Shown here one piece after another: positions 8,538 through 28,261 of a stretch of 64,000 nucleotides of DNA. Position 1 is the first letter of the stretch. Each line of letters begins with the position of its first letter. The notes beneath the pieces were generated by a model. That model had not been told where the DNA came from. It saw nothing but the letters and a program-made list of their open reading frames with translations, and did not search any database. The stretch lies in IMG/VR virus record IMGVR_UViG_3300032782_000001, positions 310,001 through 374,000 of that record; one strand, written 5' to 3'. The position numbers were made by a program, and so were the translations under genes.

Positions 8538-9773
8538 CTACTTCTTGGAATTCGTAGGAAGATCTTCCTCAACTTCTTCTTCGTCTTCGGATTCTTCCGA
8601 TTCTGGTTCTTCCTCTTCTTCGGGCGATACTTGTTCCTCTTCCTCCTCGGATTCTAGATCCAGAGTTTCATCCTTTGAAGCTTCGGAATCTTCCACCGGG
8701 GGTTCAATTTCAGTAATTTCGACCTCTTCGGGTTCAGTTTCCGTCTCTGGTGCCTCTTCCCAATCAATTTCAACATCCGCATCTTCAGATTCGACATCTT
8801 CAAGAGGAACTTCGGCGGCCCCTTCCAGACGATCCCACTCGGAATCTATAACATCAAGTAATTCTTTCTCATCAAGCCCCCAGTTTTCATCAGTGACTTC
8901 TTGGACGAATCCATCTAGGCGCTTGAGGACTGCATAAGCATGCTTGCAAAGCCAGTATTTCCTGTCAGGATCGCGTTCATTAGGCGGACCGGCAGTACCT
9001 TCAGGATTTCCCAGCAGAAAGTTATTCTCTTTAGCATGGAACTCAGGACCATTCCATCGCCAGAAAGGGCAAGTACAAGACATTGCGACTTGATTGACGT
9101 CAGATAAGGACGCCCGCACAGTTTTGGCGCCGTTCCCGCAATTAACGGAAAAAGTGAAAACTCTGCTACGTTTATCGTATGAAACGAGTTTAACGTCGCA
9201 AGATTTGGCATTGGATCGAATTTTCTCCGGAGCTCGCGGCTCTAGAGCCTCCGGTTTCAACGCGAGTCGAACCAAAAGTATGGACGAATGGCGTACAGGC
9301 TTTTCTTTGGATCTGTATGGATAATCCCAATACTGCGTCATGTCTACGTCTGACATATACGAAGTATCGGTCGGATCCTGGACATTTTCATCGAAATCAT
9401 ACTCTTGATGATGCGTCATGTCGTCCGCATCATCAATTTCGAAAATTGAACCGGGTTCCGAACTCGGAACAGTTGGTTCGTTGTCATCATAAACAAACGT
9501 TTTGGTGCCGAAATAATCGGCTTCTTCCGTTTCACCAGTAGGACTCGTACCATCCGCTGTCCTAATTGAAGCAATGCGGCTTGCAATTCTAGCAATCCTA
9601 CTAGCCGCCACTCGCTCTACTTTGATCGGAATCAAAAAGAGGGGTTTGAGATGATCAGGAATAGCTACTGCGAAACTCAAAATATCAGGAAATACCTCCT
9701 GACATTTGAAAGCGTAGATCGCGGCCTCACTGAGGACGAACCCATGGGGGAAGTCGTCATTGTTCATATTCAC
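8538..9773 (-). CDS. SWIM-type Zn-finger protein with acidic tail
   Basis: CTCPFW...CKH motif; Glu-rich C-terminus; RIASRIARIASRIASIRTA repeat. Confidence 0.7.
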   Translation of the reverse strand: MNMNNDDFPHGFVLSEAAIYAFKCQEVFPDILSFAVAIPDHLKPLFLIPIKVERVAASRIARIASRIASIRTADGTSPTGETEEADYFGTKTFVYDDNEPTVPSSEPGSIFEIDDADDMTHHQEYDFDENVQDPTDTSYMSDVDMTQYWDYPYRSKEKPVRHSSILLVRLALKPEALEPRAPEKIRSNAKSCDVKLVSYDKRSRVFTFSVNCGNGAKTVRASLSDVNQVAMSCTCPFWRWNGPEFHAKENNFLLGNPEGTAGPPNERDPDRKYWLCKHAYAVLKRLDGFVQEVTDENWGLDEKELLDVIDSEWDRLEGAAEVPLEDVESEDADVEIDWEEAPETETEPEEVEITEIEPPVEDSEASKDETLDLESEEEEEQVSPEEEEEPESEESEDEEEVEEDLPTNSKK

Positions 9774-10123
9774 TCATCGACTACAGGAAGGCCCGTCCTG
9801 CGCGGCATACGGATCCTGACTTCTTCAAGAACTCTCTCTAATTCATCAACCTTTTCCGGTCGAAGAGTTTGACGGAGTTCCTCGTAGTCGATCTTATTAA
9901 CGGCCATAGCCGCAGCTTCCAAAGCTCTCTCGAGCTTCAGAAGAGTCTGTGGGACAGCGTAAATAGTGTCGCCGGCTACAGCGTAGAAGTGATCCCGTTT
10001 GGTGCTTGCGTTAACGAGATCTAGAGCATGAGCAATGTGCCCCTTAAGCTCGTCGCAACGAAGTCGGGCATCAGAGATCTCTTCTTGGATGCAAACCATC
10101 GCGCCGGCAGTCCTGATCCTCAT
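9770..10123 (-). CDS. Hypothetical helical protein
   Basis: 117 aa; 4-bp overlap with the downstream gene. Confidence 0.6.
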   Translation of the reverse strand: MRIRTAGAMVCIQEEISDARLRCDELKGHIAHALDLVNASTKRDHFYAVAGDTIYAVPQTLLKLERALEAAAMAVNKIDYEELRQTLRPEKVDELERVLEEVRIRMPRRTGLPVVDE

Positions 10124-10160
10124 AGGGCTACCGGCGCCCGATCACAAAAGTCTTGAAGAC

Positions 10161-11408
10161 TCAGCCGCCAAATTGCTGCGGAAATTCCCTCTCGAGGGTG
10201 CGACGCATCTGGTCCCCTTCAGCCGCGTAGAGCGCCTCGAGGAAAGTAGGAGTAGCTCCGTGCTTCTTAACACGCTCCATGCGCTCCGCGAGCTTGCCTT
10301 CAAACGACCAATCCTTGGGGAACTTCGGATCAATCCGACGTGCCATCCGGATCTTGGGCGGAAGATTAGTATCTACTTCCACGGGTGTAGCTACGGCCGG
10401 TTTGGCTGCCGGTTTGGCTGCCGGTTTGGCTGCCATTTTAGTAGCCTTCGAGGTCACCTTGGGCTGCGCCACGGGTTTGGCGGCAACCTTCTTTGCCGGA
10501 GCATGCTTCTTTGCCGGAGGATCCTTGGTAGCCACACGAGCATGGCCGTTAACATGTCCATTCTGACGATTCCGGATATTGCTCGTATCTTGAACGTCAA
10601 TACCTTCTGCAGAATGATTGCGGCTACTGTGACGGACTTGTCCGATGTATTGACCGCCGTCCTCGTCCCCATCATAGACCTGTTCGCGATCCACGTTTCC
10701 GACATTCATTCGAATGTCGATGCCTTCCTGATGGACATTACGACCAGCTCGATGGACCCTGCCAGCACCGAAATCCACGTGTTGGGAACGCTCAATATCC
10801 TTGGCTTTTCCGGGTTCCTTTAGGATGTCCACCTTGCCAATGTTAGCAGGAGTCATGACACGGCCGATGGTCCGGCCATCCTGCTGGTCAATGTCGCTCA
10901 TGCTCGGGTTAAGAACCCGCTGACCGGCATTCGGATTGATGGGAGCACGGAAATTGACCTGACGGTCGTCATCCTGAACCACTCCCCGACGGTTATTGGT
11001 GTGATTGAGATGACCAGCAATTCGGCCACGGTCATCCCGGGGAAGTTTCTGTCGATCGGTCACAGTCAAAACCGTTTCCTCGTCCAGGCTTTCTGTGGCC
11101 ATGCTCTGAGGCTGAGTCCTCTGAACTCGACTCAGATCGGTAGTCTTGCTTTGAGACTTCGCAACAGCCCGAGAAGTATTGAAAGCGGGCGGTACATAGT
11201 CGTGATCCGGGTTGATTCGAGCCCAGTCGCTACGGATGGCCCCTCGAAGGGTCGGGGTTGGGAATTCAGTCCCAGAATAACGACAGACGCTTCCATCGTA
11301 TTCGAATTCATCACCCTTCTGAATAGTAATTTCATCTTTGCCACCAATACGAATCTTCATATTGGCAAAGAACTTCAGATACTCGCCACGCTTCCATTGG
11401 ACGTCCAT
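10161..11408 (-). CDS. Hypothetical protein with histone-H1-like Lys/Ala/Pro tract
   Basis: 415 aa; AAGGAG RBS; AAKP repeats. Confidence 0.7.
   Translation of the reverse strand: MDVQWKRGEYLKFFANMKIRIGGKDEITIQKGDEFEYDGSVCRYSGTEFPTPTLRGAIRSDWARINPDHDYVPPAFNTSRAVAKSQSKTTDLSRVQRTQPQSMATESLDEETVLTVTDRQKLPRDDRGRIAGHLNHTNNRRGVVQDDDRQVNFRAPINPNAGQRVLNPSMSDIDQQDGRTIGRVMTPANIGKVDILKEPGKAKDIERSQHVDFGAGRVHRAGRNVHQEGIDIRMNVGNVDREQVYDGDEDGGQYIGQVRHSSRNHSAEGIDVQDTSNIRNRQNGHVNGHARVATKDPPAKKHAPAKKVAAKPVAQPKVTSKATKMAAKPAAKPAAKPAVATPVEVDTNLPPKIRMARRIDPKFPKDWSFEGKLAERMERVKKHGATPTFLEALYAAEGDQMRRTLEREFPQQFGG
10396..10434. repeat. 12-bp coding tandem repeat (GCCGGTTTGGCT x3; encodes AAKP)
   Basis: Read directly from the sequence. 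Confidence 0.9.
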
Positions 11409-19487: not shown

Positions 19488-21803
19488 TCAGATTTCGATC
19501 TTCTTTTCCTTTTGCTCCACCTTGCCTTCAATGGACTGACCATCGTCCATGTCCACGAGCAAAGTGTTCTCGTCCAAACTCTTGAACTCGGTGAACCAGA
19601 CCTGACCGACGATGACGGAGAAGATCTGCTTAGCCTTCTCTGCAATCATTCCACGACGTTGCCTGTCTGCGGCCTTCTGGATGGGACGGAGCCAATCTTC
19701 GAACGCTTTGGTTTGATCTGATGCTTTTTTGTAAGCGTCAGACGCCATGAAATTGTCCACTTCAAGGATGGCGCGCCCCATGAGAACCGTCGGTCCATTC
19801 GGTTTGCCCTTCGCGAGCTTCTCTTTGGCTTCCTTGAGGCTCGGAAGACTTGAGAAGCCCTTGAGGCTCACAGTCATCTGCTTCGCCATATAGAAATCGC
19901 GTGCGTCTGCTTGAACGCTCTTCGGACCGAATCCGGAGTAGTCGGTGAACCCCTGTTCCTTCAGCCAATCAGCAGCCTCTTGTCCGTACTGCTCGATAAA
20001 GCCAGCACTCTTCTTCGTTCCAACCAGATCCTTAAGGACCGAGTTGTAAACCTTCTGCGAAGCTTGAACCTTCGTGAGCTCCCATTCGTTCTGGAATAGG
20101 ACTTTGGCAGAGACCGCTTTGACCATTTGCCGGTTGATGACAGGAAGGGACCTGAAGCTGATCAGGGTCACGTCCCCATCGGACTTGATAACGTCATCCC
20201 CAACCAGCCCTTGTTTGTGGATAGCAAAGAGCTTCTCCAACGTGGCTGCCGCCAATTTCACGGGCACAGTATCTACGTTTACCAGACCATCCTTGATGAC
20301 GGCGTAGTTGCGGTAAACGAAAGTCGGGAATTTCGCCGGGAGTTTGGCTTTGAGACCATCCGGGAGACGGCCGCTGATATCCACAGTTCCAGTCCTCTTG
20401 ACCTGAATACTGACGTTCGGGAACTCCTCGTTAAAGACGAGATTTGAAATAGAATATCCATCCGGTGCAGGTTCTGCTTCGAATTTCAAAGGAGCAGGCT
20501 TGTTTGAGATAGAAGCGATTCGCGCAGAGATATCTGCGACCTTCTTGGCATCCTTCGTCTTCTTCATCTCATCGGCGAGCTTATCTACTTCTGCTTGTTC
20601 TTCAGCAGTCAATACCGTCGAGGAATCTACTCGAGCCCGGGAGATCCGATCGTATTTGAAACTGGGATGATCCAGGAGAACTCGATTCTCTTCGTTCTCC
20701 GAGAGAAGGTTGAGCATGTCAAGAACCGTGAAGGCATCGTCACGCGGAATTTTCTTTGGATCGTATCCCTTAGTCAACCGTTGCTTCTCGTCAAAGACAG
20801 CGGCTTTAGCCAAGTCCATGAATTCTGAGTATTTCTGCTTGCCGAAGAGTCCACCAAATTTCTCGATGAACGCAACATCCCCCGTGAGTTTCAAGAAGGG
20901 GAGAACAACATCCGGCTTCATGCGAATGGAGAAGAGAGAAATGGCTGCATATGCTGCACCCACTTCATAAGCGTCCGTCTTCTTTCCAACGAGAGCAGGA
21001 GAGAGGTAGTAAACCACGTTAGCATTCTCAGGAACAGAAACCTTTCCGTCTGTGAGTCCGAAAGTAATGAGGTCTCCACCGTCTTCCATCCAAGCGAAAC
21101 CACCGATCGGATCACCCGTCACTGAGACTTCAATGCGCTTCCCTCCAAGTTGCTGCTTTTGCATCGCAGCTTCGAACAAGGGCGCATATTTATCAAAATT
21201 TTCAGAGAAGATGAGGGTGCCGCCTGCCTTCTCTGCCATGGAAGTGAGCAAGGGCCTGTCGGCATAGTAGCCGTATTCAACGAAGGTGGCCGAAGAAAGG
21301 CCACCAGCGGCCTTCTCGACTGCTTTGAGAATATCAGGACGTGGCCACTGATTGTCGCAACCATCGGACATGAAGAACAGGGCAAAACAGCTCCCAGGAC
21401 GCTTCTTCGATACTCGTTCTACGAGCTTGGAAGCCTCTTCTAAAGGCTCCTTGAATCCGGTAAGACAAACCGGTTTGAGCCACCTGTCGATTGCAGAATT
21501 GACTTCCTTGAGGTCTGCAAGCGTGGAAACGGGCTCCGCTTCGAGCAAAGTGCCGAATTGACCCTTGCCACTGAACCACACGATAGAGATCGTGTCCTTT
21601 TCCTTCAGGAGCTTAGGAAGCTTTTTCTTGAGCTGTTCCCTGATTTGGGGGAGCTCATACGACATGCTTCCAGAACAATCGATTACAGCAATGTGATTGA
21701 CCGGCACCTCGGCGGGCTTTGCTGGGGTAGCCTTATTGAGCTCCTGCCGAACGAGGTAAAGAGAATCCGAAACTTTGAAAGAAGTCTGCATGCCGGTCTC
21801 CAT
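19488..21803 (-). CDS. Large vWA-domain protein
   Basis: MIDAS DCSGS plus FFMSDG; 771 aa; divergent from the TROVE-like operon. Confidence 0.85.
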   Translation of the reverse strand: METGMQTSFKVSDSLYLVRQELNKATPAKPAEVPVNHIAVIDCSGSMSYELPQIREQLKKKLPKLLKEKDTISIVWFSGKGQFGTLLEAEPVSTLADLKEVNSAIDRWLKPVCLTGFKEPLEEASKLVERVSKKRPGSCFALFFMSDGCDNQWPRPDILKAVEKAAGGLSSATFVEYGYYADRPLLTSMAEKAGGTLIFSENFDKYAPLFEAAMQKQQLGGKRIEVSVTGDPIGGFAWMEDGGDLITFGLTDGKVSVPENANVVYYLSPALVGKKTDAYEVGAAYAAISLFSIRMKPDVVLPFLKLTGDVAFIEKFGGLFGKQKYSEFMDLAKAAVFDEKQRLTKGYDPKKIPRDDAFTVLDMLNLLSENEENRVLLDHPSFKYDRISRARVDSSTVLTAEEQAEVDKLADEMKKTKDAKKVADISARIASISNKPAPLKFEAEPAPDGYSISNLVFNEEFPNVSIQVKRTGTVDISGRLPDGLKAKLPAKFPTFVYRNYAVIKDGLVNVDTVPVKLAAATLEKLFAIHKQGLVGDDVIKSDGDVTLISFRSLPVINRQMVKAVSAKVLFQNEWELTKVQASQKVYNSVLKDLVGTKKSAGFIEQYGQEAADWLKEQGFTDYSGFGPKSVQADARDFYMAKQMTVSLKGFSSLPSLKEAKEKLAKGKPNGPTVLMGRAILEVDNFMASDAYKKASDQTKAFEDWLRPIQKAADRQRRGMIAEKAKQIFSVIVGQVWFTEFKSLDENTLLVDMDDGQSIEGKVEQKEKKIEI

Positions 21804-22130: not shown

Positions 22131-23996
22131 ATGCAGAAGGAAAATCTCGGACCTGCTGAGAGGATCATCAACACCATCCTGGCCTATTCGGATCACATGG
22201 TCCATAACCGGCCTGGAGTCGTTTCCCCGGACCCGACGTCGGCGACTGGTGTGAAGTGGGTGTTCGTGACCCACAAGACGGAAGACGGAAAGAAGGTCGT
22301 CTACGCCTTGGACAAGGTTGGCAAGAAGACCATCCGTCGAAAGCTCGGCGTCATGGGCGAGGACCGAAAGGTTCGTGATGACGCCAATCGCGTCATCGGT
22401 GAATATCGAGATGCCGGCATCTTTCCCGAGGTCGCAACTTGGCTTTACGGCCAAGTTGCGGAGGTGTGGAAGATCGATCATGAGTTCGCGGCTCGATGGG
22501 CCAGCTACCAATACGCCCAGGAGCATCGCGACATGAAGGCCGTTCTGGCTGCGTTCATGCTCGTGCAGTCCCGAAAGGGCGATCCTGTGATCGACGATGG
22601 CAAGGTAGCCTTCTACGACGAAGACTTCCGTGACGTCGGCGAGGCTATGATGCTCAGGTACAAGAAGGGCGACAAGCATGGGCTGCGTCCGAAGGACTTG
22701 CTTCGTATTCGGGACGTTCTCATGGTCCCGGGCGTGGCGGACATCAATCGCAAGCTCGGGTTCGGAAAGTCGGCCCGCAAGCCGTTCCTCGGCCGCTGGG
22801 AGAAGGCGGTCGAGAAGTGGTTGAAATTCCGGGAAGTCAATCCGAAAATGTTGGAAGGGCTCATCAAGGAGGGCTACAAGTCCACCGTCATGCAGCTCGC
22901 CCAGCTCATCGGTTACAAGCCGGAGTCGGATAAATTCTTCCATGCGCTTGGGTGGAAGCAGGTTCAGGCTAAGGATGGCCGTCGGGGTCTCGCGATTGGT
23001 CAGGTCCAGAGCGGCACGGACTCATGGGAAGGTATGTCCGAAGCCGAGGTCTGTGAAAAGATCGTGAAGGAAAAGACCGGCTTCAAGCGTCTCATCGGCC
23101 TCGTTCCGAAGGAGGTCGGCATGACTCGCGCCGTGATTGCGGCGGCGATCGAAGCTGGATCCTTGTCCGACAAGGACTTGGTCATCATGTCCGCCACGCT
23201 CGAAGAGCTTGGATTGCTCCAGGACCCGGATGTCCGTAAGCGTTGGGAGAAGGCTCTCAAGGCTGCTGAAGACATGCGGGCCGCAAACATTGCTTCGAGG
23301 GTCAAGTCTAAGGACGTCCAAGAGAAGCTCCAGGAAGCGGCTGACACGGCTGTTCAAAAGGCTGTCGAAGAGGTCAGCAGGGACATGCGTGTCTACTTCA
23401 TGGTCGACATCTCGGGGTCCATGGAAGGTGCAATCGAGGCGGCCAAGGATCACGTGGCGAAATTCCTTCAGGCATTCCCCGAAGACAAGATCCACGTATC
23501 CGTCTTCAACACTATCGGTCGAGAAGTGAAGGTCAAGCACCGTTCGGCTGCGGGAGTGAAGAACGCCTTTGAGGGTATTAGGGCGGAAGGTGGAACTTCA
23601 TATGCAGCAGGCGTAAGGGCCCTCCAAGGCCATAAGCCGCTTGCAAACGAAGATGTTTTGTTCATTTTCATTGGAGATGAGCAAGATAACACCGAACTCG
23701 CGGGTACCATCAGGGCTTCGGGTCTGAACCCCATGGCTTTCGGACTCGTGCCGGTCTTCGCGAAGCATTACGGACGCGGAAACCGCGTGACGACGGCAGC
23801 GTCAGAGCTCAAGATCCCGTGCTTCGAGATCGATGAAAAGACCTTCGCTGACCCGTACGCTATCCCGCGTGCAATCCGGGCTCTCATCGCGGCCACCCCC
23901 GTGAACCGTAGTCCGGAAAAGATCGTTCAGCGTGTCTCGCTCGTAGAGAACATCCTTAAAACGGATCTGATTACGAAGCCGGAGTGGGCTGCCTGA
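22131..23996 (+). CDS. TROVE/Ro60-like helical-repeat protein with C-terminal vWA domain
   Basis: Helical Lys-rich N-terminal region (EFAARWASY..RDMKAVLAAFML; VMQLAQLIGYKP), then vWA MIDAS DISGS, GGTS and IGDEQ. This is the Ro60 architecture. GGAG RBS before ATG 22131. vWA call strong, TROVE call moderate. Confidence 0.65.
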   Translation: MQKENLGPAERIINTILAYSDHMVHNRPGVVSPDPTSATGVKWVFVTHKTEDGKKVVYALDKVGKKTIRRKLGVMGEDRKVRDDANRVIGEYRDAGIFPEVATWLYGQVAEVWKIDHEFAARWASYQYAQEHRDMKAVLAAFMLVQSRKGDPVIDDGKVAFYDEDFRDVGEAMMLRYKKGDKHGLRPKDLLRIRDVLMVPGVADINRKLGFGKSARKPFLGRWEKAVEKWLKFREVNPKMLEGLIKEGYKSTVMQLAQLIGYKPESDKFFHALGWKQVQAKDGRRGLAIGQVQSGTDSWEGMSEAEVCEKIVKEKTGFKRLIGLVPKEVGMTRAVIAAAIEAGSLSDKDLVIMSATLEELGLLQDPDVRKRWEKALKAAEDMRAANIASRVKSKDVQEKLQEAADTAVQKAVEEVSRDMRVYFMVDISGSMEGAIEAAKDHVAKFLQAFPEDKIHVSVFNTIGREVKVKHRSAAGVKNAFEGIRAEGGTSYAAGVRALQGHKPLANEDVLFIFIGDEQDNTELAGTIRASGLNPMAFGLVPVFAKHYGRGNRVTTAASELKIPCFEIDEKTFADPYAIPRAIRALIAATPVNRSPEKIVQRVSLVENILKTDLITKPEWAA

Positions 23997-24176
23997 GTGG
24001 CGTACAAGACGCTGTACGCCGAGGTCAATAAGATCGAATTTCCGGAAGCTTTGGAAGCAGCCATGGAGTTGGACTCCAGGCTCCGGAAATTCGATCCATT
24101 AGACCCGGAAACTCTAAGATCGGCGTTAGTGACGCTGGCCCGGAGAGTCAAAGAACTCGAACACGAGTGGAGTTGA
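23997..24176 (+). CDS. Small hypothetical protein (59 aa)
   Basis: Below the track cutoff. GTG immediately after the upstream stop; MAYKTLYAEVNKIEF...ELEHEWS*; fills the operon gap exactly. Confidence 0.6.
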   Translation: MAYKTLYAEVNKIEFPEALEAAMELDSRLRKFDPLDPETLRSALVTLARRVKELEHEWS

Positions 24177-24177
24177 G

Positions 24178-24471
24178 ATGGGGTGGGCCTCAGGCCACAT
24201 CCAAAAGCTGATTGCGGGTGAAACCGTGCATTTCCGACCCCACGGCAATTCCATGTTGCCGAGGATCAAGTCGGGTCAACTTTGCACGGTTTCACCCGTA
24301 AGTCTGGATGACGTTAAAGTAGGTGACGTCATCCTTTGCAAGGTGCACGGACGCGAATTTCTTCACCTTGTCTCGGCAATCCGTGGTGGTCAATTGCAAA
24401 TCTCGAACAATCACGGGCACATCAACGGGTGGATTGGGCCAAAGTCGGTCTACGGGAAACTGGTGGAATAA
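24178..24471 (+). CDS. S24/S26 peptidase-like small protein
   Basis: GNSMLPRIKSGQ...GDVILCKV..FLHLV. Confidence 0.7.
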   Translation: MGWASGHIQKLIAGETVHFRPHGNSMLPRIKSGQLCTVSPVSLDDVKVGDVILCKVHGREFLHLVSAIRGGQLQISNNHGHINGWIGPKSVYGKLVE

Positions 24472-25493
24472 TGGGCTGGCGGAACCTTCTGCAAGAAAAG
24501 GAAGAACTCATCGTTCTGCCGTGGCTTGGGGGTCGAACGCTCAGGTCCGGTCCACGTGCGTGGCATTTGGACGGGAAGCTCCCTGCTGAACATGGTTGGT
24601 ACACTTTCAAACTCATGGGACGGAAAGCTATCCTCGGTGATTCCTACGACGAGGAATTGGCGAAGGAGCCGTGCGTACAGCCTCCAGGTTCCTTAATGTG
24701 TGAAGTGACTGGCTATCTTGTCGGTGACCGGCTCATCCTAGATAATGCCAATGTGGATCCGGATCCTTCGAAAATTGCGGAACAGTCGGAGACTGTGCAT
24801 CTCATCGAAGATGGACTGGATAGATTCGCTCGTATCGAAGCTGGGCGAGCGTGTGAAGACGGCCCACTCATCTACAGCGGAATGGTGATGCCGTTAGGGC
24901 CTGAGGAGGAAGTCCTCCAAGCATTTCTCGAACAAAAGTCATCTGTAGCAAACATCAAGGGCGTAGTTCCTGCACTGGACGCTGCCTTCCGTATGGAAGT
25001 TTGGCAGCGAATTGAAGCTGCCAAACGACGTGCAGAACTTGAGAGGATTCGCAAAGAAGAGGAAGAGAAGAGGCGTATTGAGGAGAAACGCCGGGAAATT
25101 GTCGAGAAGCTCGGCGACGGAGCTGGTCGAAGGGCAATGGCTGCCATCGATTTCGATGAAGCTGCCAGGGCTGCATTTGTTGTTGGAAATGCTCAGTTCC
25201 TGGATAGTCGGAAGAGCGCTCAAAAAGGCGAGATGGTCGTCCGCTTCCGTCTCGATAATCGTAGATTCGAATGCACCTGTGACAAGTTGACACTTAGAGT
25301 TATTGATGCGGGCATCTGTCTAGTTGATCACCGGACGCACGAGAAGGGTGATGGTTATTTCACGCTCGAAAGTTTACCTGGGGTTATTAGGCAAGCCCAG
25401 CGTGAGGGTAAACTCGTAGTCTTCCGTCGCGTGGACGGAGAAAACTATCCAAGGGGAGGAAATGATGATGACGATGAAGATTACGACGATTGA
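24471..25493 (+). CDS. Coiled-coil protein with putative divergent E2-like C-terminal domain
   Basis: Start ATG overlaps the upstream TAA. DAGICL recalls the E2 active-site GxICL; lies next to the JAB, Ubl and E1 genes. Confidence 0.45.
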   Translation: MGWRNLLQEKEELIVLPWLGGRTLRSGPRAWHLDGKLPAEHGWYTFKLMGRKAILGDSYDEELAKEPCVQPPGSLMCEVTGYLVGDRLILDNANVDPDPSKIAEQSETVHLIEDGLDRFARIEAGRACEDGPLIYSGMVMPLGPEEEVLQAFLEQKSSVANIKGVVPALDAAFRMEVWQRIEAAKRRAELERIRKEEEEKRRIEEKRREIVEKLGDGAGRRAMAAIDFDEAARAAFVVGNAQFLDSRKSAQKGEMVVRFRLDNRRFECTCDKLTLRVIDAGICLVDHRTHEKGDGYFTLESLPGVIRQAQREGKLVVFRRVDGENYPRGGNDDDDEDYDD

Positions 25494-25502
25494 GGTAACA
25501 TC

Positions 25503-26057
25503 ATGAGCATGGAAGCAGGAGTCGTCGTAGGAAAAGACGGTAAGGCAATTCATTGGCATCTTCCGGAAGAGAGGACCGGCGGATCTCTGCCCGATTCTCA
25601 GGCTCTCTGGGATTTCATCTGGAAGAATCGAAATGAAATTATGGGGATCGCCCACAGTCATCCTGGACGGGGACTTCCGGGGCCATCACACACGGATGTA
25701 ACCACTTTTGCCGCCATTGAGGATGGTCTCGGGAAGAGGCTCCTTTGGTGGATTACAAGCGAAGACAAACTTGTAGTCATCAAATGGGTAGGTCCTGGAA
25801 AGCACACTTATTCATCCAGGGAGATCTCGAGTAATGACCCCGAATGGTTAAAGCCACTCCGAAACGCATCTCACGAACTTTCAGAAGCTCGACTCGAAGA
25901 AGTTTGCCAGTATGTAACGGAGACTCACCGGGAAGCTGCTCGACGGGTGTCTGCAGGAAAAGCGGCGCTCGAGGACATGGTAGTGTCAGTCCTCAACGGG
26001 CTCCCCCATGCCGATCCAGATGAGATTCGGAAGAAGATCCTGGATTCGGTGAAATAA
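25503..26057 (+). CDS. JAB/MPN+ metallopeptidase
   Basis: N-terminal Glu (MEAG) and HSHP...PSHTD JAMM motif. Confidence 0.85.
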   Translation: MSMEAGVVVGKDGKAIHWHLPEERTGGSLPDSQALWDFIWKNRNEIMGIAHSHPGRGLPGPSHTDVTTFAAIEDGLGKRLLWWITSEDKLVVIKWVGPGKHTYSSREISSNDPEWLKPLRNASHELSEARLEEVCQYVTETHREAARRVSAGKAALEDMVVSVLNGLPHADPDEIRKKILDSVK

Positions 26058-26102
26058 ATCCAAAACTTGGGAACGTAAGTTCCTCTTCTAAGGAGAATCG
26101 AA

Positions 26103-26372
26103 ATGAACGAAATGGTAATCGAGGCAGGACAGGCGAGGGTCAACATCACGTGGCAGGGTCAGAACGGGGACATGCCTGGCGCTGTCCATTACGACTCGAC
26201 GGACGGCGACGTCCGACAGTGGGTCACGGAGGCCGTTCGCACGGGTGGGGTGCCTGGTATTCGTGCTGACGCCGCCGCGAATTTCACGGACTTCGTCGTG
26301 GAGAGGTTCCCGTCGACGCAGGATAGGCCCTTCAACCTGATCCAGGTCAGGCCGAAGACGCCGTTCGGTTGA
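26103..26372 (+). CDS. Ubiquitin-like small protein (putative)
   Basis: 89 aa; strong AAGGAG RBS; ends LIQVRPKTPFG with a terminal Gly; between JAB and E1. Confidence 0.65.
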   Translation: MNEMVIEAGQARVNITWQGQNGDMPGAVHYDSTDGDVRQWVTEAVRTGGVPGIRADAAANFTDFVVERFPSTQDRPFNLIQVRPKTPFG

Positions 26373-26800
26373 TGGAGAAGAATTCGGAAGAAGAAGCCTG
26401 GAAACAGGCTGTCGACCTCTGGAAAAAACTCGCCCAGATCCGAGGCGTGGCGTACTCCGCCATGTTCGCAGTCAGGGGTGAGATGATAGAAGAAGAAAAA
26501 GCGGAACTCCTTGAGGACCTCGAAAAAGTCCTCAAGGAGACTGCTGTTGACTTCCCCAATGGGGTGGATTGGAACGCTCACGAAAACGGTGAGTTCAAGC
26601 TTCTTCCTAAGAAGATAGAGGATTACATGGAAGCCAAGATCAAGACAACTGGATTCAAAGTGGAAATTCAGTTGAACGAATATGAGGCAGATTCCATTCG
26701 TCGGGCCGTAATCGGCCGTGATGATCGGGAAGCTCAGAAGCTTATGCAACAACTTTCCGAGACCGTTTGGAAGGCTGTGGTTAACGCTGTAAACAAGTGA
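26372..26800 (+). CDS. Hypothetical helical protein
   Basis: TGATG coupling with the Ubl gene; overlaps the E1 start. Confidence 0.6.
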   Translation: MEKNSEEEAWKQAVDLWKKLAQIRGVAYSAMFAVRGEMIEEEKAELLEDLEKVLKETAVDFPNGVDWNAHENGEFKLLPKKIEDYMEAKIKTTGFKVEIQLNEYEADSIRRAVIGRDDREAQKLMQQLSETVWKAVVNAVNK

Positions 26801-27381
26801 TCTCCATGAAGAACATCACCATCGTGGGAGTAGGAGCACTCGGATCGCATTTCGTGCAATTCGCGCGCGGGTTCCCGGCTGCTCTCAAGATTATTGACTT
26901 TGATCGAGTGGAACAGAAGAACGTCGCGTCACAGTTCCACGCGAAGACCTCGGTCGGCAAAGGAAAGGTCCTCGGTCTCCAACAGACCGTCCAGCTCCTC
27001 TGGGGTATGAAGCTTACCACAGTGCCTCATAAGTTGACTTCCGAAAATGAAGCACAAATTCTCGGTGGGGCCGATCTCATCGTAGATTGCCTCGACAATG
27101 GGGCAGCACGACGCATCGTCCAGGGATTTGTTCGAAAGAATACTATCCCGTGCGTTCACGGGGCCTTGGCCGCAGACGCCGCCTTCGGGCGGGTCGTATG
27201 GGACGAGTCATTCGCAATTGACGATGAGCCGGGAGAAGGTGCGCCTACCTGCGAAGACGGCGTTCATCTCCCTTTCATCGCCCTCGCCTCGTCTTTACTC
27301 GCTCGCGCAGTACAGGTCTTCATCACGGACGGGAAGAAGATCGGATACCAAATCAGACCAAACGGCGTCGTCCAAACGTGA
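26797..27381 (+). CDS. ThiF/E1-like adenylating enzyme
   Basis: VGVGALGS, IDFDRVEQKN, GKV, DLIVDCLDN..ARR; candidate catalytic Cys in APTCEDG. Confidence 0.9.
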   Translation: MISMKNITIVGVGALGSHFVQFARGFPAALKIIDFDRVEQKNVASQFHAKTSVGKGKVLGLQQTVQLLWGMKLTTVPHKLTSENEAQILGGADLIVDCLDNGAARRIVQGFVRKNTIPCVHGALAADAAFGRVVWDESFAIDDEPGEGAPTCEDGVHLPFIALASSLLARAVQVFITDGKKIGYQIRPNGVVQT

Positions 27382-27384
27382 GTC

Positions 27385-27413
27385 TTGACAGAGACACTCG
27401 TCGAGTGTATTCT
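27385..27413 (+). promoter_or_regulatory. Sigma70-type promoter for the ncRNA array, with a palindromic spacer
   Basis: TTGACA-17 nt-TATTCT; ACACTCG-T-CGAGTGT spans the spacer and the -10 edge. Confidence 0.85.
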
Positions 27414-27430
27414 GGTGGAAAGCACAAATC

Positions 27431-27509
27431 CAGAGAGCACGTCCAACAAGCGGAACTCACAAGCTAGGATACAGCCAAAACCAGTTTCGCCACTCGGGCG
27501 CGCTCTCTG
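27431..27509 (+). ncRNA. Y-RNA-like unit 1 (minimal module)
   Basis: Closing stem CAGAGAGCACGTCC/GGGCGCGCTCTCTG; inner stem GCGGAACT/AGTTTCGC; ACAAGC and ACC motifs. Confidence 0.7.
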
Positions 27510-27515
27510 AATTCT

Positions 27516-27644
27516 GCCGGACATGAGGACTGGCGTCCTCGATTCCCCCATACGGAATTTTCCCGGTACCGCTCCTCGGTCCTGAAAGGGACCACCTAAC
27601 GGTTCCTACAAGCAAGGAAGGTTCGATTCCTTCGTCCGGCTCCA
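27516..27644 (+). tRNA. Atypical tRNA(CAT)-like RNA with a 57-nt variable-arm insert (unit 2)
   Basis: Acceptor GCCGGAC/GTCCGGC + T-CCA; D arm GAGGAC-TGGC-GTCCTC; anticodon arm GATTCC-CCCATAC-GGAATT; T arm GAAGG-TTCGATT-CCTTC. Confidence 0.75.
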
Positions 27645-27764
27645 GAGCGTCCAGTTAGCGGTGCTTACAAGCAAGATGCTCCTAGGTGGAGCGTCGGATT
27701 CTGCATCCGAAGGGGCGGCTTCGAAAACCGCTCTTGCACAACCAGCATCGGCCCTCGGACGCTC
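27645..27764 (+). ncRNA. YrlA-like RNA, module plus tRNA-mimic domain (unit 3)
   Basis: GAGCGTCC/GGACGCTC; CGGTGCT/AGCATCG; GCAAGA/TCTTGC closes D-like, anticodon-like and TTCGA-containing T-like hairpins. Confidence 0.75.
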
Positions 27765-27778
27765 GTAGTCTCGTAGTT

Positions 27779-27811
27779 TTTGACCCGACCAAGATTCTTG
27801 GTCGGGTCAAA
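27779..27811. terminator. Perfect 16-bp inverted repeat between convergent units (bidirectional terminator)
   Basis: TTTGACCCGACCAAGA-T-TCTTGGTCGGGTCAAA. Confidence 0.8.
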
Positions 27812-27817
27812 TCGTCT

Positions 27818-28261
27818 TTAGGATTCCATGACATCTCGGATTTCGGTCATGGATTCTTTGGACCAATATTCTTTGAGCTTCTTGGTTGCATAAGCCGCCC
27901 ACCTTCGAATTTTCGGGCGACCTTTTATGCATTGTGTATATTTATATTCAGAAAAACTGTTTTGGTAATTTTCATGATGATAACAGAAATCGAAAGAAAA
28001 AGAACAGCCATTTCCGTTGCCATAAATGGCAACGGAACCATTAATCTTGCCCACTTCCTTTACTCCGAGATGAATATCTGCGGACACAATCGTTCGGAAG
28101 TCGAAATTATCTCGATAAATCCGGCAATTGGAAACTTGGAAACCAGCTCGTTCTAAGGGACGAATGGCAGCTTTAAGGCAATCTTCACCATAAGCGATAG
28201 ATATATCCCTCTTAGGTGAGGGCCTAACGTCTTTCTTGTGCCTGAGTTTCCTGATGGTCAT
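27818..28261 (-). CDS. Hypothetical protein with C-terminal IRDVMES tag
   Basis: 147-aa ORF. Confidence 0.65.
   Translation of the reverse strand: MTIRKLRHKKDVRPSPKRDISIAYGEDCLKAAIRPLERAGFQVSNCRIYRDNFDFRTIVSADIHLGVKEVGKINGSVAIYGNGNGCSFSFDFCYHHENYQNSFSEYKYTQCIKGRPKIRRWAAYATKKLKEYWSKESMTEIRDVMES

What the first reader, a model, noticed from the sequence alone, without database searches (positions are those of the whole stretch)
27385..27811. Three ncRNAs carry one covarying module in three topologies
The shared module is: outer helix G(T/A)CC-A...CTC-GG, a symmetric internal loop, an inner helix, then YACAAGC opposite CC. The inner helix covaries: GCGGAACT/AGTTTCGC (unit 1), CGGTGCT/AGCATCG (unit 3), CGGTTCC/GGTACCG (unit 2). 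Unit 1 caps it with a tiny hairpin. Unit 3 caps it with a tRNA-mimic cloverleaf, as in bacterial YrlA. Unit 2 has it circularly permuted and closed by a GAAA tetraloop. The array has its own TTGACA-17-TATTCT promoter and a 16-bp inverted-repeat end. Inference: a constant protein-binding handle with interchangeable cargo domains. RNase P and 3' processing of the central tRNA could release all three units.
Basis: partly seen in the sequence, partly recalled or inferred. Interest (0 to 1): 0.88.

Follow-up and report, generated by a model that had tools for sequence, protein, structure and literature searches.

The report
Huge-phage tRNA-like RNAs sharing one handle
A 436-kb phage encodes three small structured RNAs that carry the same conserved two-helix module wired in three different ways onto tRNA-like bodies, just downstream of a gene for a Ro60-like protein, which looks like a new phage version of the Ro/Y-RNA system.

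Summary
Window 27385-27811 (+) holds a promoter-like site, three separately folding RNA units and a 15-bp terminator-like hairpin. All three units carry one module: outer helix, roughly symmetric internal loop ending in CUC on the 3' strand, inner helix, then YACAAGC opposite CC.

The window comes from a 436-kb phage contig. Related huge phages carry hundreds of copies. In 55 distinct hairpin-form copies, all 12 base pairs covary (89.8% paired against 59.4% in shuffles). A soil-metagenome relative of this array shows compensatory changes.

The family has four topologies:
- tRNA-shaped with the module as a giant variable arm (unit 2);
- module embracing a normal-order tRNA-like cloverleaf (unit 3);
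- module with only a small hairpin (unit 1);
- module embracing a permuted tRNA-like body in YrlA-like arm order (relatives only).

A conserved gene 3.4 kb upstream on the same strand encodes a helical-repeat plus vWA protein. Its predicted structure matches Ro60/TROVE best, but no sequence model detects TROVE. The canonical Ro-binding motif is absent and no Rfam family matches.

Best reading: a new Y-RNA-like family whose module is a protein-binding handle. Binding, transcripts and processing are untested.

The parts
22131..23996 (+). Gene for a Ro60-like protein (P0001, 621 aa): N-terminal beta domain, about 315 aa of helical repeats, C-terminal vWA domain
   Evidence: Pfam VWA_2 E = 1.8e-9. 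AF2 model pLDDT 80.9. The top five Foldseek PDB hits are Ro60/TROVE entries: 9kop E = 2.5e-8, 1yvr, 9l5y (two chains), 1yvp; 2i91 ranks 14th. These Ro60/TROVE hits align over 513-556 columns, but TM is only 0.24-0.41. BFVD hits include a TROVE domain-containing phage protein. In the Atlas, 65 of 100 named neighbours are TROVE clusters. No Pfam TROVE hit by sequence.
24471..25493 (+). Conserved gene of unknown function (P0121, 340 aa) that always follows the Ro60-like gene
   Evidence: 1234 homologs. Syntenic in L002-L020. AF2 pLDDT 79.8. No fold match with E < 0.1.
25503..26057 (+). JAB-domain protein gene
   Evidence: Pfam Prok-JAB E = 2.2e-5. Syntenic in relatives.
26797..27381 (+). Short ThiF/E1-like adenylyltransferase gene, ending 4 nt before the RNA promoter
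   Evidence: Pfam ThiF E = 2.3e-22. PADLOC E1-E2 models up to E = 5.9e-13.
27385..27413 (+). Sigma-70-like promoter TTGACA-17-TATTCT
   Evidence: A TTGAC(A) element follows the E1 stop in several relatives. The soil relative has TTGACA-17-TACGCT (loose end at 27416).
27431..27509 (+). Unit 1: open-form module capped by a small hairpin only (short class)
   Evidence: Fold z = -7.25. 11 further short units in relatives.
27516..27644 (+). Unit 2: tRNA-shaped RNA with 7-bp acceptor stem, D-like hairpin, anticodon-like hairpin, T arm and UCCA end; the module sits as a giant variable arm
   Evidence: Model R1 scores 61.2 bits, E = 2.3e-12 at 27558-27615. Of 95 units of this type, 91 have 7/7 acceptor pairing.
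27564..27613 (+). Hairpin-form module of unit 2: inner helix, CUC loop, outer helix closed by GAAA, ACCUAA loop, inner helix, UACAAGC
27645..27764 (+). Unit 3: open-form module embracing a normal-order tRNA-like cloverleaf
   Evidence: Fold z = -3.55. The open-form scan finds it, listed as L146 88-203, which is the same contig stretch. 26 units of this class across the clade loci.
27671..27738 (+). tRNA-like cloverleaf inside unit 3: 6-bp acceptor stem, loop UUCUGCA, imperfect T stem
   Evidence: Rfam tRNA 30.8 bits, E = 2.4e-4. Not called by ARAGORN.
27779..27811 (+). Terminator-like 15-bp hairpin, shared with the convergent minus-strand ORF that ends at 27818
   Evidence: Fold z = -6.89.

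Best explanation
Window 27385-27811 is a small non-coding RNA operon of a 436-kb phage.

One transcript is proposed to run from the promoter to the terminator hairpin. It carries three members of a clade-specific RNA family. The family is defined by a portable module of about 45 nt: an outer helix, an internal loop with A-rich 5' side and NCUC 3' side, an inner helix, and a YACA(A/C)GC / CC junction.

The module is grafted onto tRNA-derived bodies in different circular permutations. I propose that it is the docking site for the Ro60-like (helical-repeat plus vWA) protein encoded 3.4 kb upstream. On this reading the RNAs are functional analogues of bacterial Y RNAs:
- YrlA-like when they carry a tRNA-like body;
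- YrlB-like when they do not (unit 1).

The tRNA-shaped unit 2, with its 7-bp acceptor stem and UCCA, would be cut by host RNase P and 3'-end enzymes. That would also release units 1 and 3 (tRNA punctuation). The tRNA-like bodies would then present the particle to tRNA-binding or RNA-decay/repair enzymes.

**Shown:** the structures, their conservation and covariation, the four topologies, the synteny and strand bias, and the Ro60-like predicted fold.

**Inferred:** transcription, processing, protein binding and biological role.
For: **Structure under selection**
- MAFFT alignment of 31 hairpin-form modules: 12 of 12 pairs show compensatory changes; 84.4% paired against 62.5% in shuffles; covariation score 0.684 against 0.14-0.23 when partners are slid.
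- 55 distinct copies found with model R1 around Ro60-like genes: 89.8% paired against 59.4%; 212 against 61 double-change cells; score 0.873 against at most 0.203 slid.
- Frequent U.G pairs with U on the 5' side fit an RNA read from the + strand.
- An 87.5%-identical relative of this array in a soil metagenome keeps pairs through double changes: 27580/27591, 27617/27633, 27618/27632, 27619/27631 and 27718/27728. CUC and ACAAGC stay unchanged, while the anticodon-like loops change.

**Module independent of cargo**
- 95 tRNA-shaped units were collected.
- The open-form scan found 67 unique units: 26 normal-order, 22 permuted, 11 short and 8 unclassified. It gave 107 hits on the + strand against 20 on the minus strand.

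**Link to the Ro60-like gene**
- The operon Ro60-like / P0121 / JAB / ORF / E1 is conserved.
- 60 of 60 R1 hits in 66 Ro60-like loci lie on the gene's strand, in 31 loci, mostly 2.4-8 kb downstream.
- 12 of 13 module-bearing contigs found by DNA pattern alone also carry the gene.
- Fold evidence.
- RtcB directly follows E1 in L016. This parallels the bacterial operon that encodes Rsr, Y RNAs and RtcB (10.1101/312249).

**Specificity of the model**
- Among 765 kb of loci fetched by a loose DNA pattern, the only strong R1 hit lay in a contig of this same clade; one other locus gave a weak hit.
- 0 of 80 bacterial or archaeal pattern matches were confirmed.

**Precedents**
- Ro60 and Y RNAs lie within 4 kb on the same strand.
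- YrlA mimics a permuted tRNA.
- M. smegmatis YrlA is cut by RNase P and receives CCA.
- Phages encode Ro60 plus Y-like RNAs.
(PMC4201824, 10.1101/312249, PMC12135203, PMC7824862.)
Against: - No experiment or RNA-seq run was available.
- The known Ro-binding motifs (GNCGAAN0-1G, GGUCCGA, CGAA) are absent. No Y RNA model in Rfam matches even at E <= 10.
- The protein is TROVE-like by predicted structure only. TM-scores are low (0.24-0.41). No TROVE signal appears in Pfam for 40 family members, for 5 divergent homologs from related loci, or for 10 more distant relatives from the profile search. A profile search of PDB sequences also finds nothing.
- All carriers belong to one phage clade, so co-occurrence may reflect shared descent rather than function.
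- The arrays lie in tRNA islands. This genome has six more units 230 kb from the operon.
- L016, L018 and L020 have the operon without modules nearby.
- The JAB/E1 genes of the operon have no known role with Ro60.
Confidence: 0.5

Rival explanations
1. The tRNA-shaped units are working phage tRNAs, or tRNA decoys, with a clade-specific giant variable arm. Some other factor would read that arm, such as a phage synthetase, a modification enzyme or a nuclease shield. It would have no functional tie to the Ro60-like protein. The open forms would be by-products or precursors.
For: - 91 of 95 units have perfect 7-bp acceptor stems, G1 occurs in 89, and CCA is encoded in 24.
- After in-silico removal of the arm, ARAGORN of 95 as tRNAs, with more than 20 different anticodons.
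- More distant relatives have canonical D arms.
- Units sit inside ordinary tRNA arrays.
Against: - The phage already has a near-complete ordinary tRNA set: 35 in one island.
- Half of the units have non-canonical D or anticodon arms. Window unit 2 has C33 and a 4-nt D-like loop.
- Anticodon-like loops change between close relatives while the module does not.
- The same module occurs on bodies that cannot be aminoacylated: 22 permuted units with closed acceptor stems and 11 with no tRNA body.
Confidence: 0.2
2. The module is an RNA-processing element. An endonuclease would cut both strands at the internal loop and a ligase such as RtcB would rejoin them. That would convert the permuted and embracing forms into circular or re-ordered tRNA-like products, as in the maturation of permuted tRNA genes.
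For: - Permuted and non-permuted versions coexist in the same arrays.
- Conserved unpaired nucleotides lie exactly in the internal loop.
- RtcB is adjacent in L016 and present near two other operons.
- Permuted tRNA genes are processed this way in algae and archaea (PMC3978253).
Against: - The loop is not a bulge-helix-bulge motif; it is two opposed 4-7-nt strands rather than two 3-nt bulges 4 bp apart.
- No splicing endonuclease was seen.
- RtcB is near only 3 of about 85 loci and is absent from the window.
- Short units have nothing to mature.
- The hairpin form needs no rearrangement yet keeps the loop sequence.
Confidence: 0.1
3. The units are decaying tRNA-derived repeats with no function of their own.
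For: Unit 3 has a degenerate cloverleaf with C37 and an imperfect T stem. Unit 1 lacks a body.
Against: Compensatory changes occur in every pair across 55 or more copies and between close relatives. Unpaired motifs are invariant. Promoter and terminator are conserved. The short class recurs.
Confidence: 0.03

Closest known systems
Bacterial and phage YrlA-type Y RNAs with Ro60 (Rsr) (PMC4201824; 10.1101/312249; PMC12135203)
   Same: - ncRNAs of 80-135 nt lie within 4 kb of, and on the same strand as, a ring-plus-vWA protein gene.
- The design is modular: a long stem with an internal loop plus a tRNA-like domain with a UUCGA T loop.
- Several copies occur per locus.
- A permuted form with a closed acceptor hairpin exists in relatives.
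- RtcB is an occasional neighbour.
- Precedent for opening by RNase P and CCA addition (M. smegmatis YrlA).
   Different: - The conserved handle sequence is different: CUC(G) and YACA(A/C)GC rather than GNCGAAN0-1G or GGUCCGA.
- The handle sits at the variable-arm position, or outside the acceptor stem, and not at the anticodon-stem position.
- An anticodon-like arm is retained.
- Four topologies exist instead of one.
- Arrays hold up to about 9 units inside tRNA islands.
- The partner protein is not recognisable as TROVE by sequence and has an extra N-terminal beta domain.
- No Rfam or Y RNA model matches.
Salmonella YrlB (short Y RNA without tRNA-like domain)
   Same: Unit 1 and 11 further short units consist of the handle plus a small hairpin. 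They are encoded next to tRNA-like siblings.
   Different: No sequence similarity; binding untested.
Class II tRNAs and other tRNAs with long variable arms (PMC3333845)
   Same: Unit 2 has a tRNA layout with an extra arm between the anticodon and T arms.
   Different: - The arm is about 45-50 nt, with a conserved internal loop, against 13-21 nt.
- The D-like loop is too small.
- The flanking junction is 7-12 nt.
- The same arm occurs without a tRNA body.
Circularly permuted tRNA genes and two-piece tmRNA genes (PMC3978253; PMC3985003)
   Same: One RNA architecture is encoded in permuted gene orders.
   Different: No BHB motif. Permuted and unpermuted copies coexist side by side. No mRNA-like part.

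Membership tests
Y RNA / YrlA | Encoded within about 4 kb of a Ro60 gene, on the same strand | tested here: met
   Unit 1 starts 3.4 kb after the stop of the Ro60-like gene, on the same strand. 60 of 60 module hits in 66 homologous loci lie on that strand.
Y RNA / YrlA | Conserved Ro-binding motif in the terminal stem (GNCGAAN0-1G in bacteria, GGUCCGA in animals) | tested here: not met
   None of the three units contains it. Family-conserved positions are C(C), CUCG, ACA and G.
Y RNA / YrlA | Match to a curated Y RNA covariance model | tested here: not met
   No Y RNA family at the gathering score or at E <= 10. Only tRNA hits in a relative's array.
Y RNA / YrlA | tRNA-like domain in permuted order (V-T-closed acceptor-D) joined through the anticodon-stem position | tested here: not met
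   Window units are normal-order (unit 3) or open-acceptor (unit 2). Relatives have 22 units with the order T arm, closed acceptor hairpin, D arm. In those the handle sits at the variable-arm position and an anticodon-like arm is kept.
Y RNA / YrlA | Binds Ro60 in vivo or in vitro | not testable with these tools
   No RNA or RIP data; no RNA run listed.
Ro60 / TROVE protein (for P0001) | TROVE (HEAT-repeat ring) domain detectable by sequence profile | tested here: not met
   No Pfam PF05731 hit in P0001, in 40 family members, in 5 divergent homologs from related loci or in 10 more distant relatives from the profile search. Profile searches of PDB sequences find no Ro60.
Ro60 / TROVE protein (for P0001) | Ro60 fold: helical-repeat domain followed by a vWA domain | tested here: inconclusive
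   The top five Foldseek PDB hits are Ro60/TROVE entries, and these (with 2i91 at rank 14) align over 513-556 columns (E = 2.5e-8 to 4.1e-5). TM is only 0.24-0.41 and the model pTM is 0.50. BFVD includes a TROVE phage protein, E = 7.5e-6. Atlas feature score 0.88, a lead only. vWA is confirmed by Pfam.
Canonical tRNA | Cloverleaf recognised by tRNA finders, with U33 and purine 37 | tested here: inconclusive
   Unit 3: Rfam tRNA 30.8 bits (gathering score 29) in the local scan only; ARAGORN negative; C37; 6-bp acceptor stem. Unit 2: not recognised; C33. 45 of 95 family members are called only after the arm is removed in silico.
Canonical tRNA | 7-bp acceptor stem, discriminator, CCA end, UUCGA T loop | tested here: met
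   Unit 2: GCCGGAC/GUCCGGC, then U, then CCA; T loop UUCGAUU. 91 of 95 family units have 7/7 acceptor pairing.
Permuted or split tRNA genes processed through BHB | Bulge-helix-bulge motif (3-nt bulges separated by 4 bp) at the junction | tested here: not met
   The internal loop is two opposed strands of 4-7 nt.
tmRNA | tRNA-like domain plus tag reading frame | tested here: not met
   ARAGORN finds no tmRNA in the window. It does find one in L018.

The most novel reading that the evidence does not exclude
Huge phages may have evolved their own Ro-like ribonucleoprotein system. A portable RNA handle, unrelated in sequence to known Ro sites, would be grafted in at least four circular permutations onto tRNA scaffolds. 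It would be produced from tRNA-punctuated arrays and read by a sequence-divergent Ro60-like protein. That protein is encoded with a JAB/E1 (ubiquitin-like conjugation type) gene set. The particles could recruit or decoy host tRNA-processing, RNA-decay or tRNA-targeting defence enzymes during infection.
Probability: 0.3. Interest if true: 0.88.

Novelty: new variant of a known kind. Interest (0 to 1): 0.8.

Why it matters
Y RNAs and Ro60 are conserved from bacteria to humans, yet what the tRNA-like part of bacterial Y RNAs does is still open.

This family shows one handle attached to tRNA-like bodies in four wirings, and also to no body at all. It is a natural domain-swap series, so handle and cargo functions can be separated at the bench.

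The family also adds hundreds of unannotated structured RNAs to huge-phage genomes. tRNA finders miss them and Rfam has no model for them. A protein family with more than 1,400 members currently labelled only 'VWA' or 'hypothetical' would gain a likely role.

If the handle proves to bind something other than the Ro60-like protein, the family would be a new class of phage tRNA mimic.

Tried and rejected
**RNA family and tRNA finders**
- Rfam at the gathering score on the whole window: nothing.
- Rfam at E <= 10 on the region: only the unit 3 tRNA hit plus chance miRNA-type hits on the terminator hairpin.
- ARAGORN on the window: no tRNA or tmRNA.

**Sequence similarity**
- blastn of the region against 50,697 phage records: no match.
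- tblastn of P0001 against phage records: only Virus Rctr197k (54.8% identity, annotated 'similar to conserved hypothetical protein'). It has no module within 9 kb.

**Operon proteins**
- PADLOC: only the E1 matches.
- NCBIfam gives nothing specific.
- The 89-aa and 143-aa ORFs could not be shown to be Ubl or E2, so I do not name them.
- P0121 (340 aa): no family, no Atlas neighbour, no fold match.

**Sequence-level bridge from P0001 to TROVE**
- Pfam on 40 family members, 5 divergent homologs from related loci and 10 more distant relatives from the profile search.
- A profile search of 1.84 billion proteins.
- A broadened profile against PDB sequences.
- All negative.

**Pattern scans**
- A loose pattern in IMG/VR was useless. 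Only one of 80 loci scanned held a strong R1 hit, and that locus belongs to this clade.
- A strict pattern in bacterial and archaeal genomes gave only chance matches; 0 of 80 were confirmed.

**Expression**
- RNA-seq: none was listed.

**Readings rejected**
- Self-cleaving ribozyme: no Rfam ribozyme hit.
- BHB splicing motif: wrong geometry.
- DNA-level repeat: U.G pairs and the strand bias argue for RNA.
Full report
**1. What is in the window**

The stretch 27385-27822 (+) lies between the stop of a ThiF/E1-like gene (27381) and a convergent minus-strand ORF that ends at 27818. In order it contains:

- TTGACA-17-TATTCT at 27385-27413;
- three RNA units;
- a 15-bp hairpin at 27779-27811.

Folded as one RNA, positions 27414-27822 give three independent domains plus the hairpin. 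The MFE is -169.4 kcal/mol against -131.9 for shuffles, z = -6.45. Each unit also folds alone, with z of -7.25, -3.32 and -3.55.

**2. Anatomy of the three units**

| Feature | Unit 1 (27431-27509) | Unit 3 (27645-27764) |
|---|---|---|
| Outer helix | 14 positions with one A/C mismatch | 8 bp, GAGCGUCC/GGACGCUC |
| Internal loop | AACAA / CACUC | AGUUAG / GCCCUC |
| Inner helix | 8 bp, GCGGAACU/AGUUUCGC | CGGUGCU/AGCAUCG |
| Junction | CACAAGC ... CC | UACAAGC ... CC |
| Cap | small hairpin | cloverleaf at 27671-27738 |

The unit 3 cloverleaf scores 30.8 bits on the Rfam tRNA model (E = 2.4e-4). It is degenerate: a 6-bp acceptor stem, C at position 37 and an imperfect T stem. ARAGORN ignores it.

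Unit 2 (27516-27644) is tRNA-shaped. Its parts in order are:

- acceptor stem GCCGGAC/GUCCGGC followed by UCCA;
- a D-like hairpin with a GG-containing 4-nt loop;
- a 5-bp stem with the 7-nt loop CCCAUAC;
- the module, in place of a variable arm, running 3' strand first and closed by GAAA;
- UACAAGC;
- a T arm with loop UUCGAUU.

The hairpin has 15 pairs rather than 16.

**3. Origin**

The window is part of IMG/VR contig UViG_3300032782_000001 (436,316 bp), at contig coordinates 310001-374000. The sample is a wetland metagenome. blastn finds no phage record with this region.

**4. The module is a conserved, covarying RNA structure**

- Relatives fetched through the E1 gene carry arrays of the same units at the same place.
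- A MAFFT alignment of 31 hairpin-form modules gives a consensus structure of 12 pairs. All 12 show compensatory changes. 84.4% of cells pair, against 62.5% in shuffles. The covariation score is 0.684, against 0.14-0.23 for slid partners.
- Covariance model R1 finds 35 copies with E < 1e-4 in 14 E1 loci.
- In 66 loci fetched independently through the Ro60-like gene, R1 finds 60 copies (55 distinct). There 89.8% of cells pair against 59.4%. 212 cells show double changes against 61 expected. The score is 0.873 against at most 0.203. That alignment is fitted to the model, so it leans towards the structure. The MAFFT result does not have this bias.
- Positions conserved in at least 90% of copies are unpaired: C of CC, CUCG, ACA and G.
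- U.G pairs with U on the 5' side are common. They would be A.C mismatches on the other strand, so the + strand is the RNA strand.

**5. Independent natural variant**

A 729-nt contig from a 2025 soil metagenome covers 27416-27769 at about 87.5% identity.

- Compensatory double changes:
  - 27580 U>C with 27591 A>G (unit 2 outer helix);
  - 27617/27633, 27618/27632 and 27619/27631 (unit 2 T stem);
  - 27718/27728 (unit 3 T stem).
- Pair-compatible single changes: 27453 G>A turns G.U into A-U, and 27569 C>U turns C-G into U.G.
- CUC and ACAAGC are unchanged. 27607 U>C keeps the Y.
- Both anticodon-like loops change, as do the 5'-side internal loops.
- Upstream, the relative has TTGACA-17-TACGCT.

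**6. Four topologies**

*(a) tRNA-shaped units with the module as a giant variable arm*
- 95 units were collected, median length 134 nt.
- 91 have 7/7 acceptor pairing, 89 start with G, and 24 encode CCA.
- ARAGORN of 95 intact units. After the arm is removed in silico it of 95, with more than 20 different anticodons.

*(b-d) Open-form units*
- A scan of 1.65 Mb of clade loci found 107 hits on the + strand against 20 on the minus strand, giving 67 unique units.
- (b) 26 embrace a normal-order tRNA-like body. Their acceptor stems range from 2 to 7 bp.
- (c) 22 embrace a permuted body in the order T arm, closed acceptor hairpin, D arm, anticodon-like arm.
- (d) 11 hold only a short hairpin.
- 8 were unclassified.

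The window has classes a, b and d. In arrays, tRNA-shaped and open units alternate with spacers of 10 nt or less (L012, L013, L015 and the window). This is the basis of the tRNA-punctuation idea.

**7. Genomic context**

The upstream genes on the same strand are:

| Coordinates | Product | Evidence |
|---|---|---|
| 22131-23996 | 621-aa protein, C-terminal vWA | Pfam E = 1.8e-9 |
| 24471-25493 | 340-aa protein, unknown function | |
| 25503-26057 | JAB-domain protein | Pfam |
| two small ORFs | not assigned | |
| 26797-27381 | ThiF/E1-like protein | Pfam |

The gene order is conserved in L002-L020.

The 621-aa protein has more than 1,482 homologs, many on contigs of 200-620 kb. Evidence on its fold:

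- The AF2 model (pLDDT 80.9, pTM 0.50) shows a small beta domain, about 315 residues of helices, and a vWA domain.
- The top five Foldseek PDB matches are Ro60/TROVE structures: 9kop, 1yvr, 9l5y (two chains) and 1yvp; 2i91 ranks 14th. E runs from 2.5e-8 to 4.1e-5 over 513-556 aligned columns. vWA-only hits align about 190 columns. TM is only 0.24-0.41.
- BFVD gives full-length matches that include a 'TROVE domain-containing protein' of an uncultured phage.
- In the Atlas, 65 of 100 named feature neighbours are TROVE clusters, at score 0.88, which is a lead only.
- No sequence method sees TROVE.

I therefore call the protein Ro60-like in architecture, with remote homology likely but unproven.

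**8. Distribution and specificity**

- A DNA pattern scan of IMG/VR, confirmed with R1, found modules in 13 contigs. 12 of these also carry the Ro60-like gene.
- In 765 kb of loci fetched by a loose pattern, R1 gave one strong hit, in a contig of this same clade, and one weak hit elsewhere.
- 80 bacterial and archaeal pattern matches gave none.
- The link to the operon is not exclusive:
  - This genome has five more tRNA-shaped units and one embracing unit inside its main tRNA island, which holds 35 ordinary tRNAs, 230 kb away.
  - L016, L018 and L020 have the operon without nearby modules.
- In L016 an RtcB gene (Pfam E = 2.7e-89) follows E1 directly. RtcB lies near two other operons.

**9. 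Mechanism I commit to (confidence about 0.5)**

- The array is transcribed from its own promoter (inferred).
- Unit 2 is recognised by RNase P and 3'-end enzymes. This separates the three RNAs (inferred from its acceptor stem, G1 and UCCA, and from the RNase P precedent in M. smegmatis YrlA, 10.1101/312249).
- The module is the binding site of the Ro60-like protein (inferred from synteny, strand bias and the Y-RNA-like architecture).
- The tRNA-like bodies act as the effector-facing part, as proposed for YrlA. Unit 1 is a body-less version comparable to YrlB (PMC4201824).

Structure, conservation and topology are shown. Everything biochemical is inferred.

**10. Rival readings**

- Working or decoy tRNAs with a giant variable arm, read by another factor (0.2).
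- A cut-and-rejoin processing element (0.1).
- Decaying repeats (0.03).

The recurrence of the module on closed-acceptor and body-less RNAs argues against the first. The loop geometry and the rarity of RtcB argue against the second. Covariation argues against the third.

**11. Comparison with known systems**

The closest known system is Ro60 with YrlA/YrlB-type Y RNAs. These are already known in some phages (PMC4201824, PMC12135203, PMC7824862).

The window RNAs work like that system on paper, but they fail three membership tests: the Ro-binding motif, the Rfam model, and the position and order of the tRNA-like domain. The partner protein fails the sequence test for TROVE. I therefore file them as a new variant of a known kind, not as YrlA members.

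My full-text literature searches found no description of this RNA family.

Noticed in passing
L141 3108-4011 (same contig as the window, contig coordinates about 99.2-100.1 kb): The window's own genome has a second cluster: five tRNA-shaped module units and one tRNA-embracing unit. It sits inside a tRNA island with 35 ARAGORN-called tRNAs, 230 kb from the Ro60-like operon.
   Followed up: partly
L016 6587-7993: An RtcB RNA ligase gene (Pfam E = 2.7e-89) starts 2 nt after the E1 gene, at the place where other phages carry the RNA array. RtcB also lies about 3 kb upstream of the Ro60-like gene in L164 and L224.
   Followed up: partly
window 24471-25493: A 340-aa protein always follows the Ro60-like gene. 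It has 1234 homologs, a confident AF2 model with two beta-rich domains joined by a long charged helix, and no match in Pfam, PDB or the Atlas. It is a candidate second partner of the RNAs.
   Followed up: partly
window 25503-27381: A JAB-domain protein and a short (194 aa) ThiF/E1-like protein are conserved in the same operon as the Ro60-like gene. The two small ORFs between them (26103-26372, 26369-26800) could not be assigned as Ubl or E2. A link between Ro-like proteins and ubiquitin-like conjugation genes is unexplained.
   Followed up: partly
L233 (KX853510.1, Virus Rctr197k) 8989-10938: This is the only GenBank phage record with a close homolog of the Ro60-like gene (54.8% identity over the whole protein). 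The gene is annotated there as a misc_feature, 'similar to conserved hypothetical protein', directly after an array of about 37 tRNAs. No module was found within 9 kb.
   Followed up: partly
L018 7690-8047: A phage-encoded tmRNA (tag ANDDVEQLVPQLAAA) and two tRNA-Glu genes occupy the position downstream of E1 in this relative.
   Followed up: no
L208 6274-6410 and other tRNA-shaped units: After in-silico removal of the arm, ARAGORN reads one unit with anticodon UUA (stop-codon reader) and one with UCA (SeC/opal), among more than 20 anticodons. More distant relatives have fully canonical D arms.
   Followed up: no
window 19488-21803 (-): A 771-aa protein with an N-terminal vWA-like region matches phrog_2426 (E = 5e-177). 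It is encoded divergently from the Ro60-like operon, so two vWA proteins lie back to back.
   Followed up: no
window 24178-24471: A 97-aa ORF just upstream of, and partly overlapping, the long reading of the 340-aa gene has a weak Peptidase_S24 hit (E = 9.6e-4). Gene starts in 23997-24471 are uncertain.
   Followed up: no
window 27416-27769 in run X3: A soil metagenome from 2025 holds the same three-unit array at about 87.5% identity. The array therefore exists in at least two habitats and studies.
   Followed up: yes
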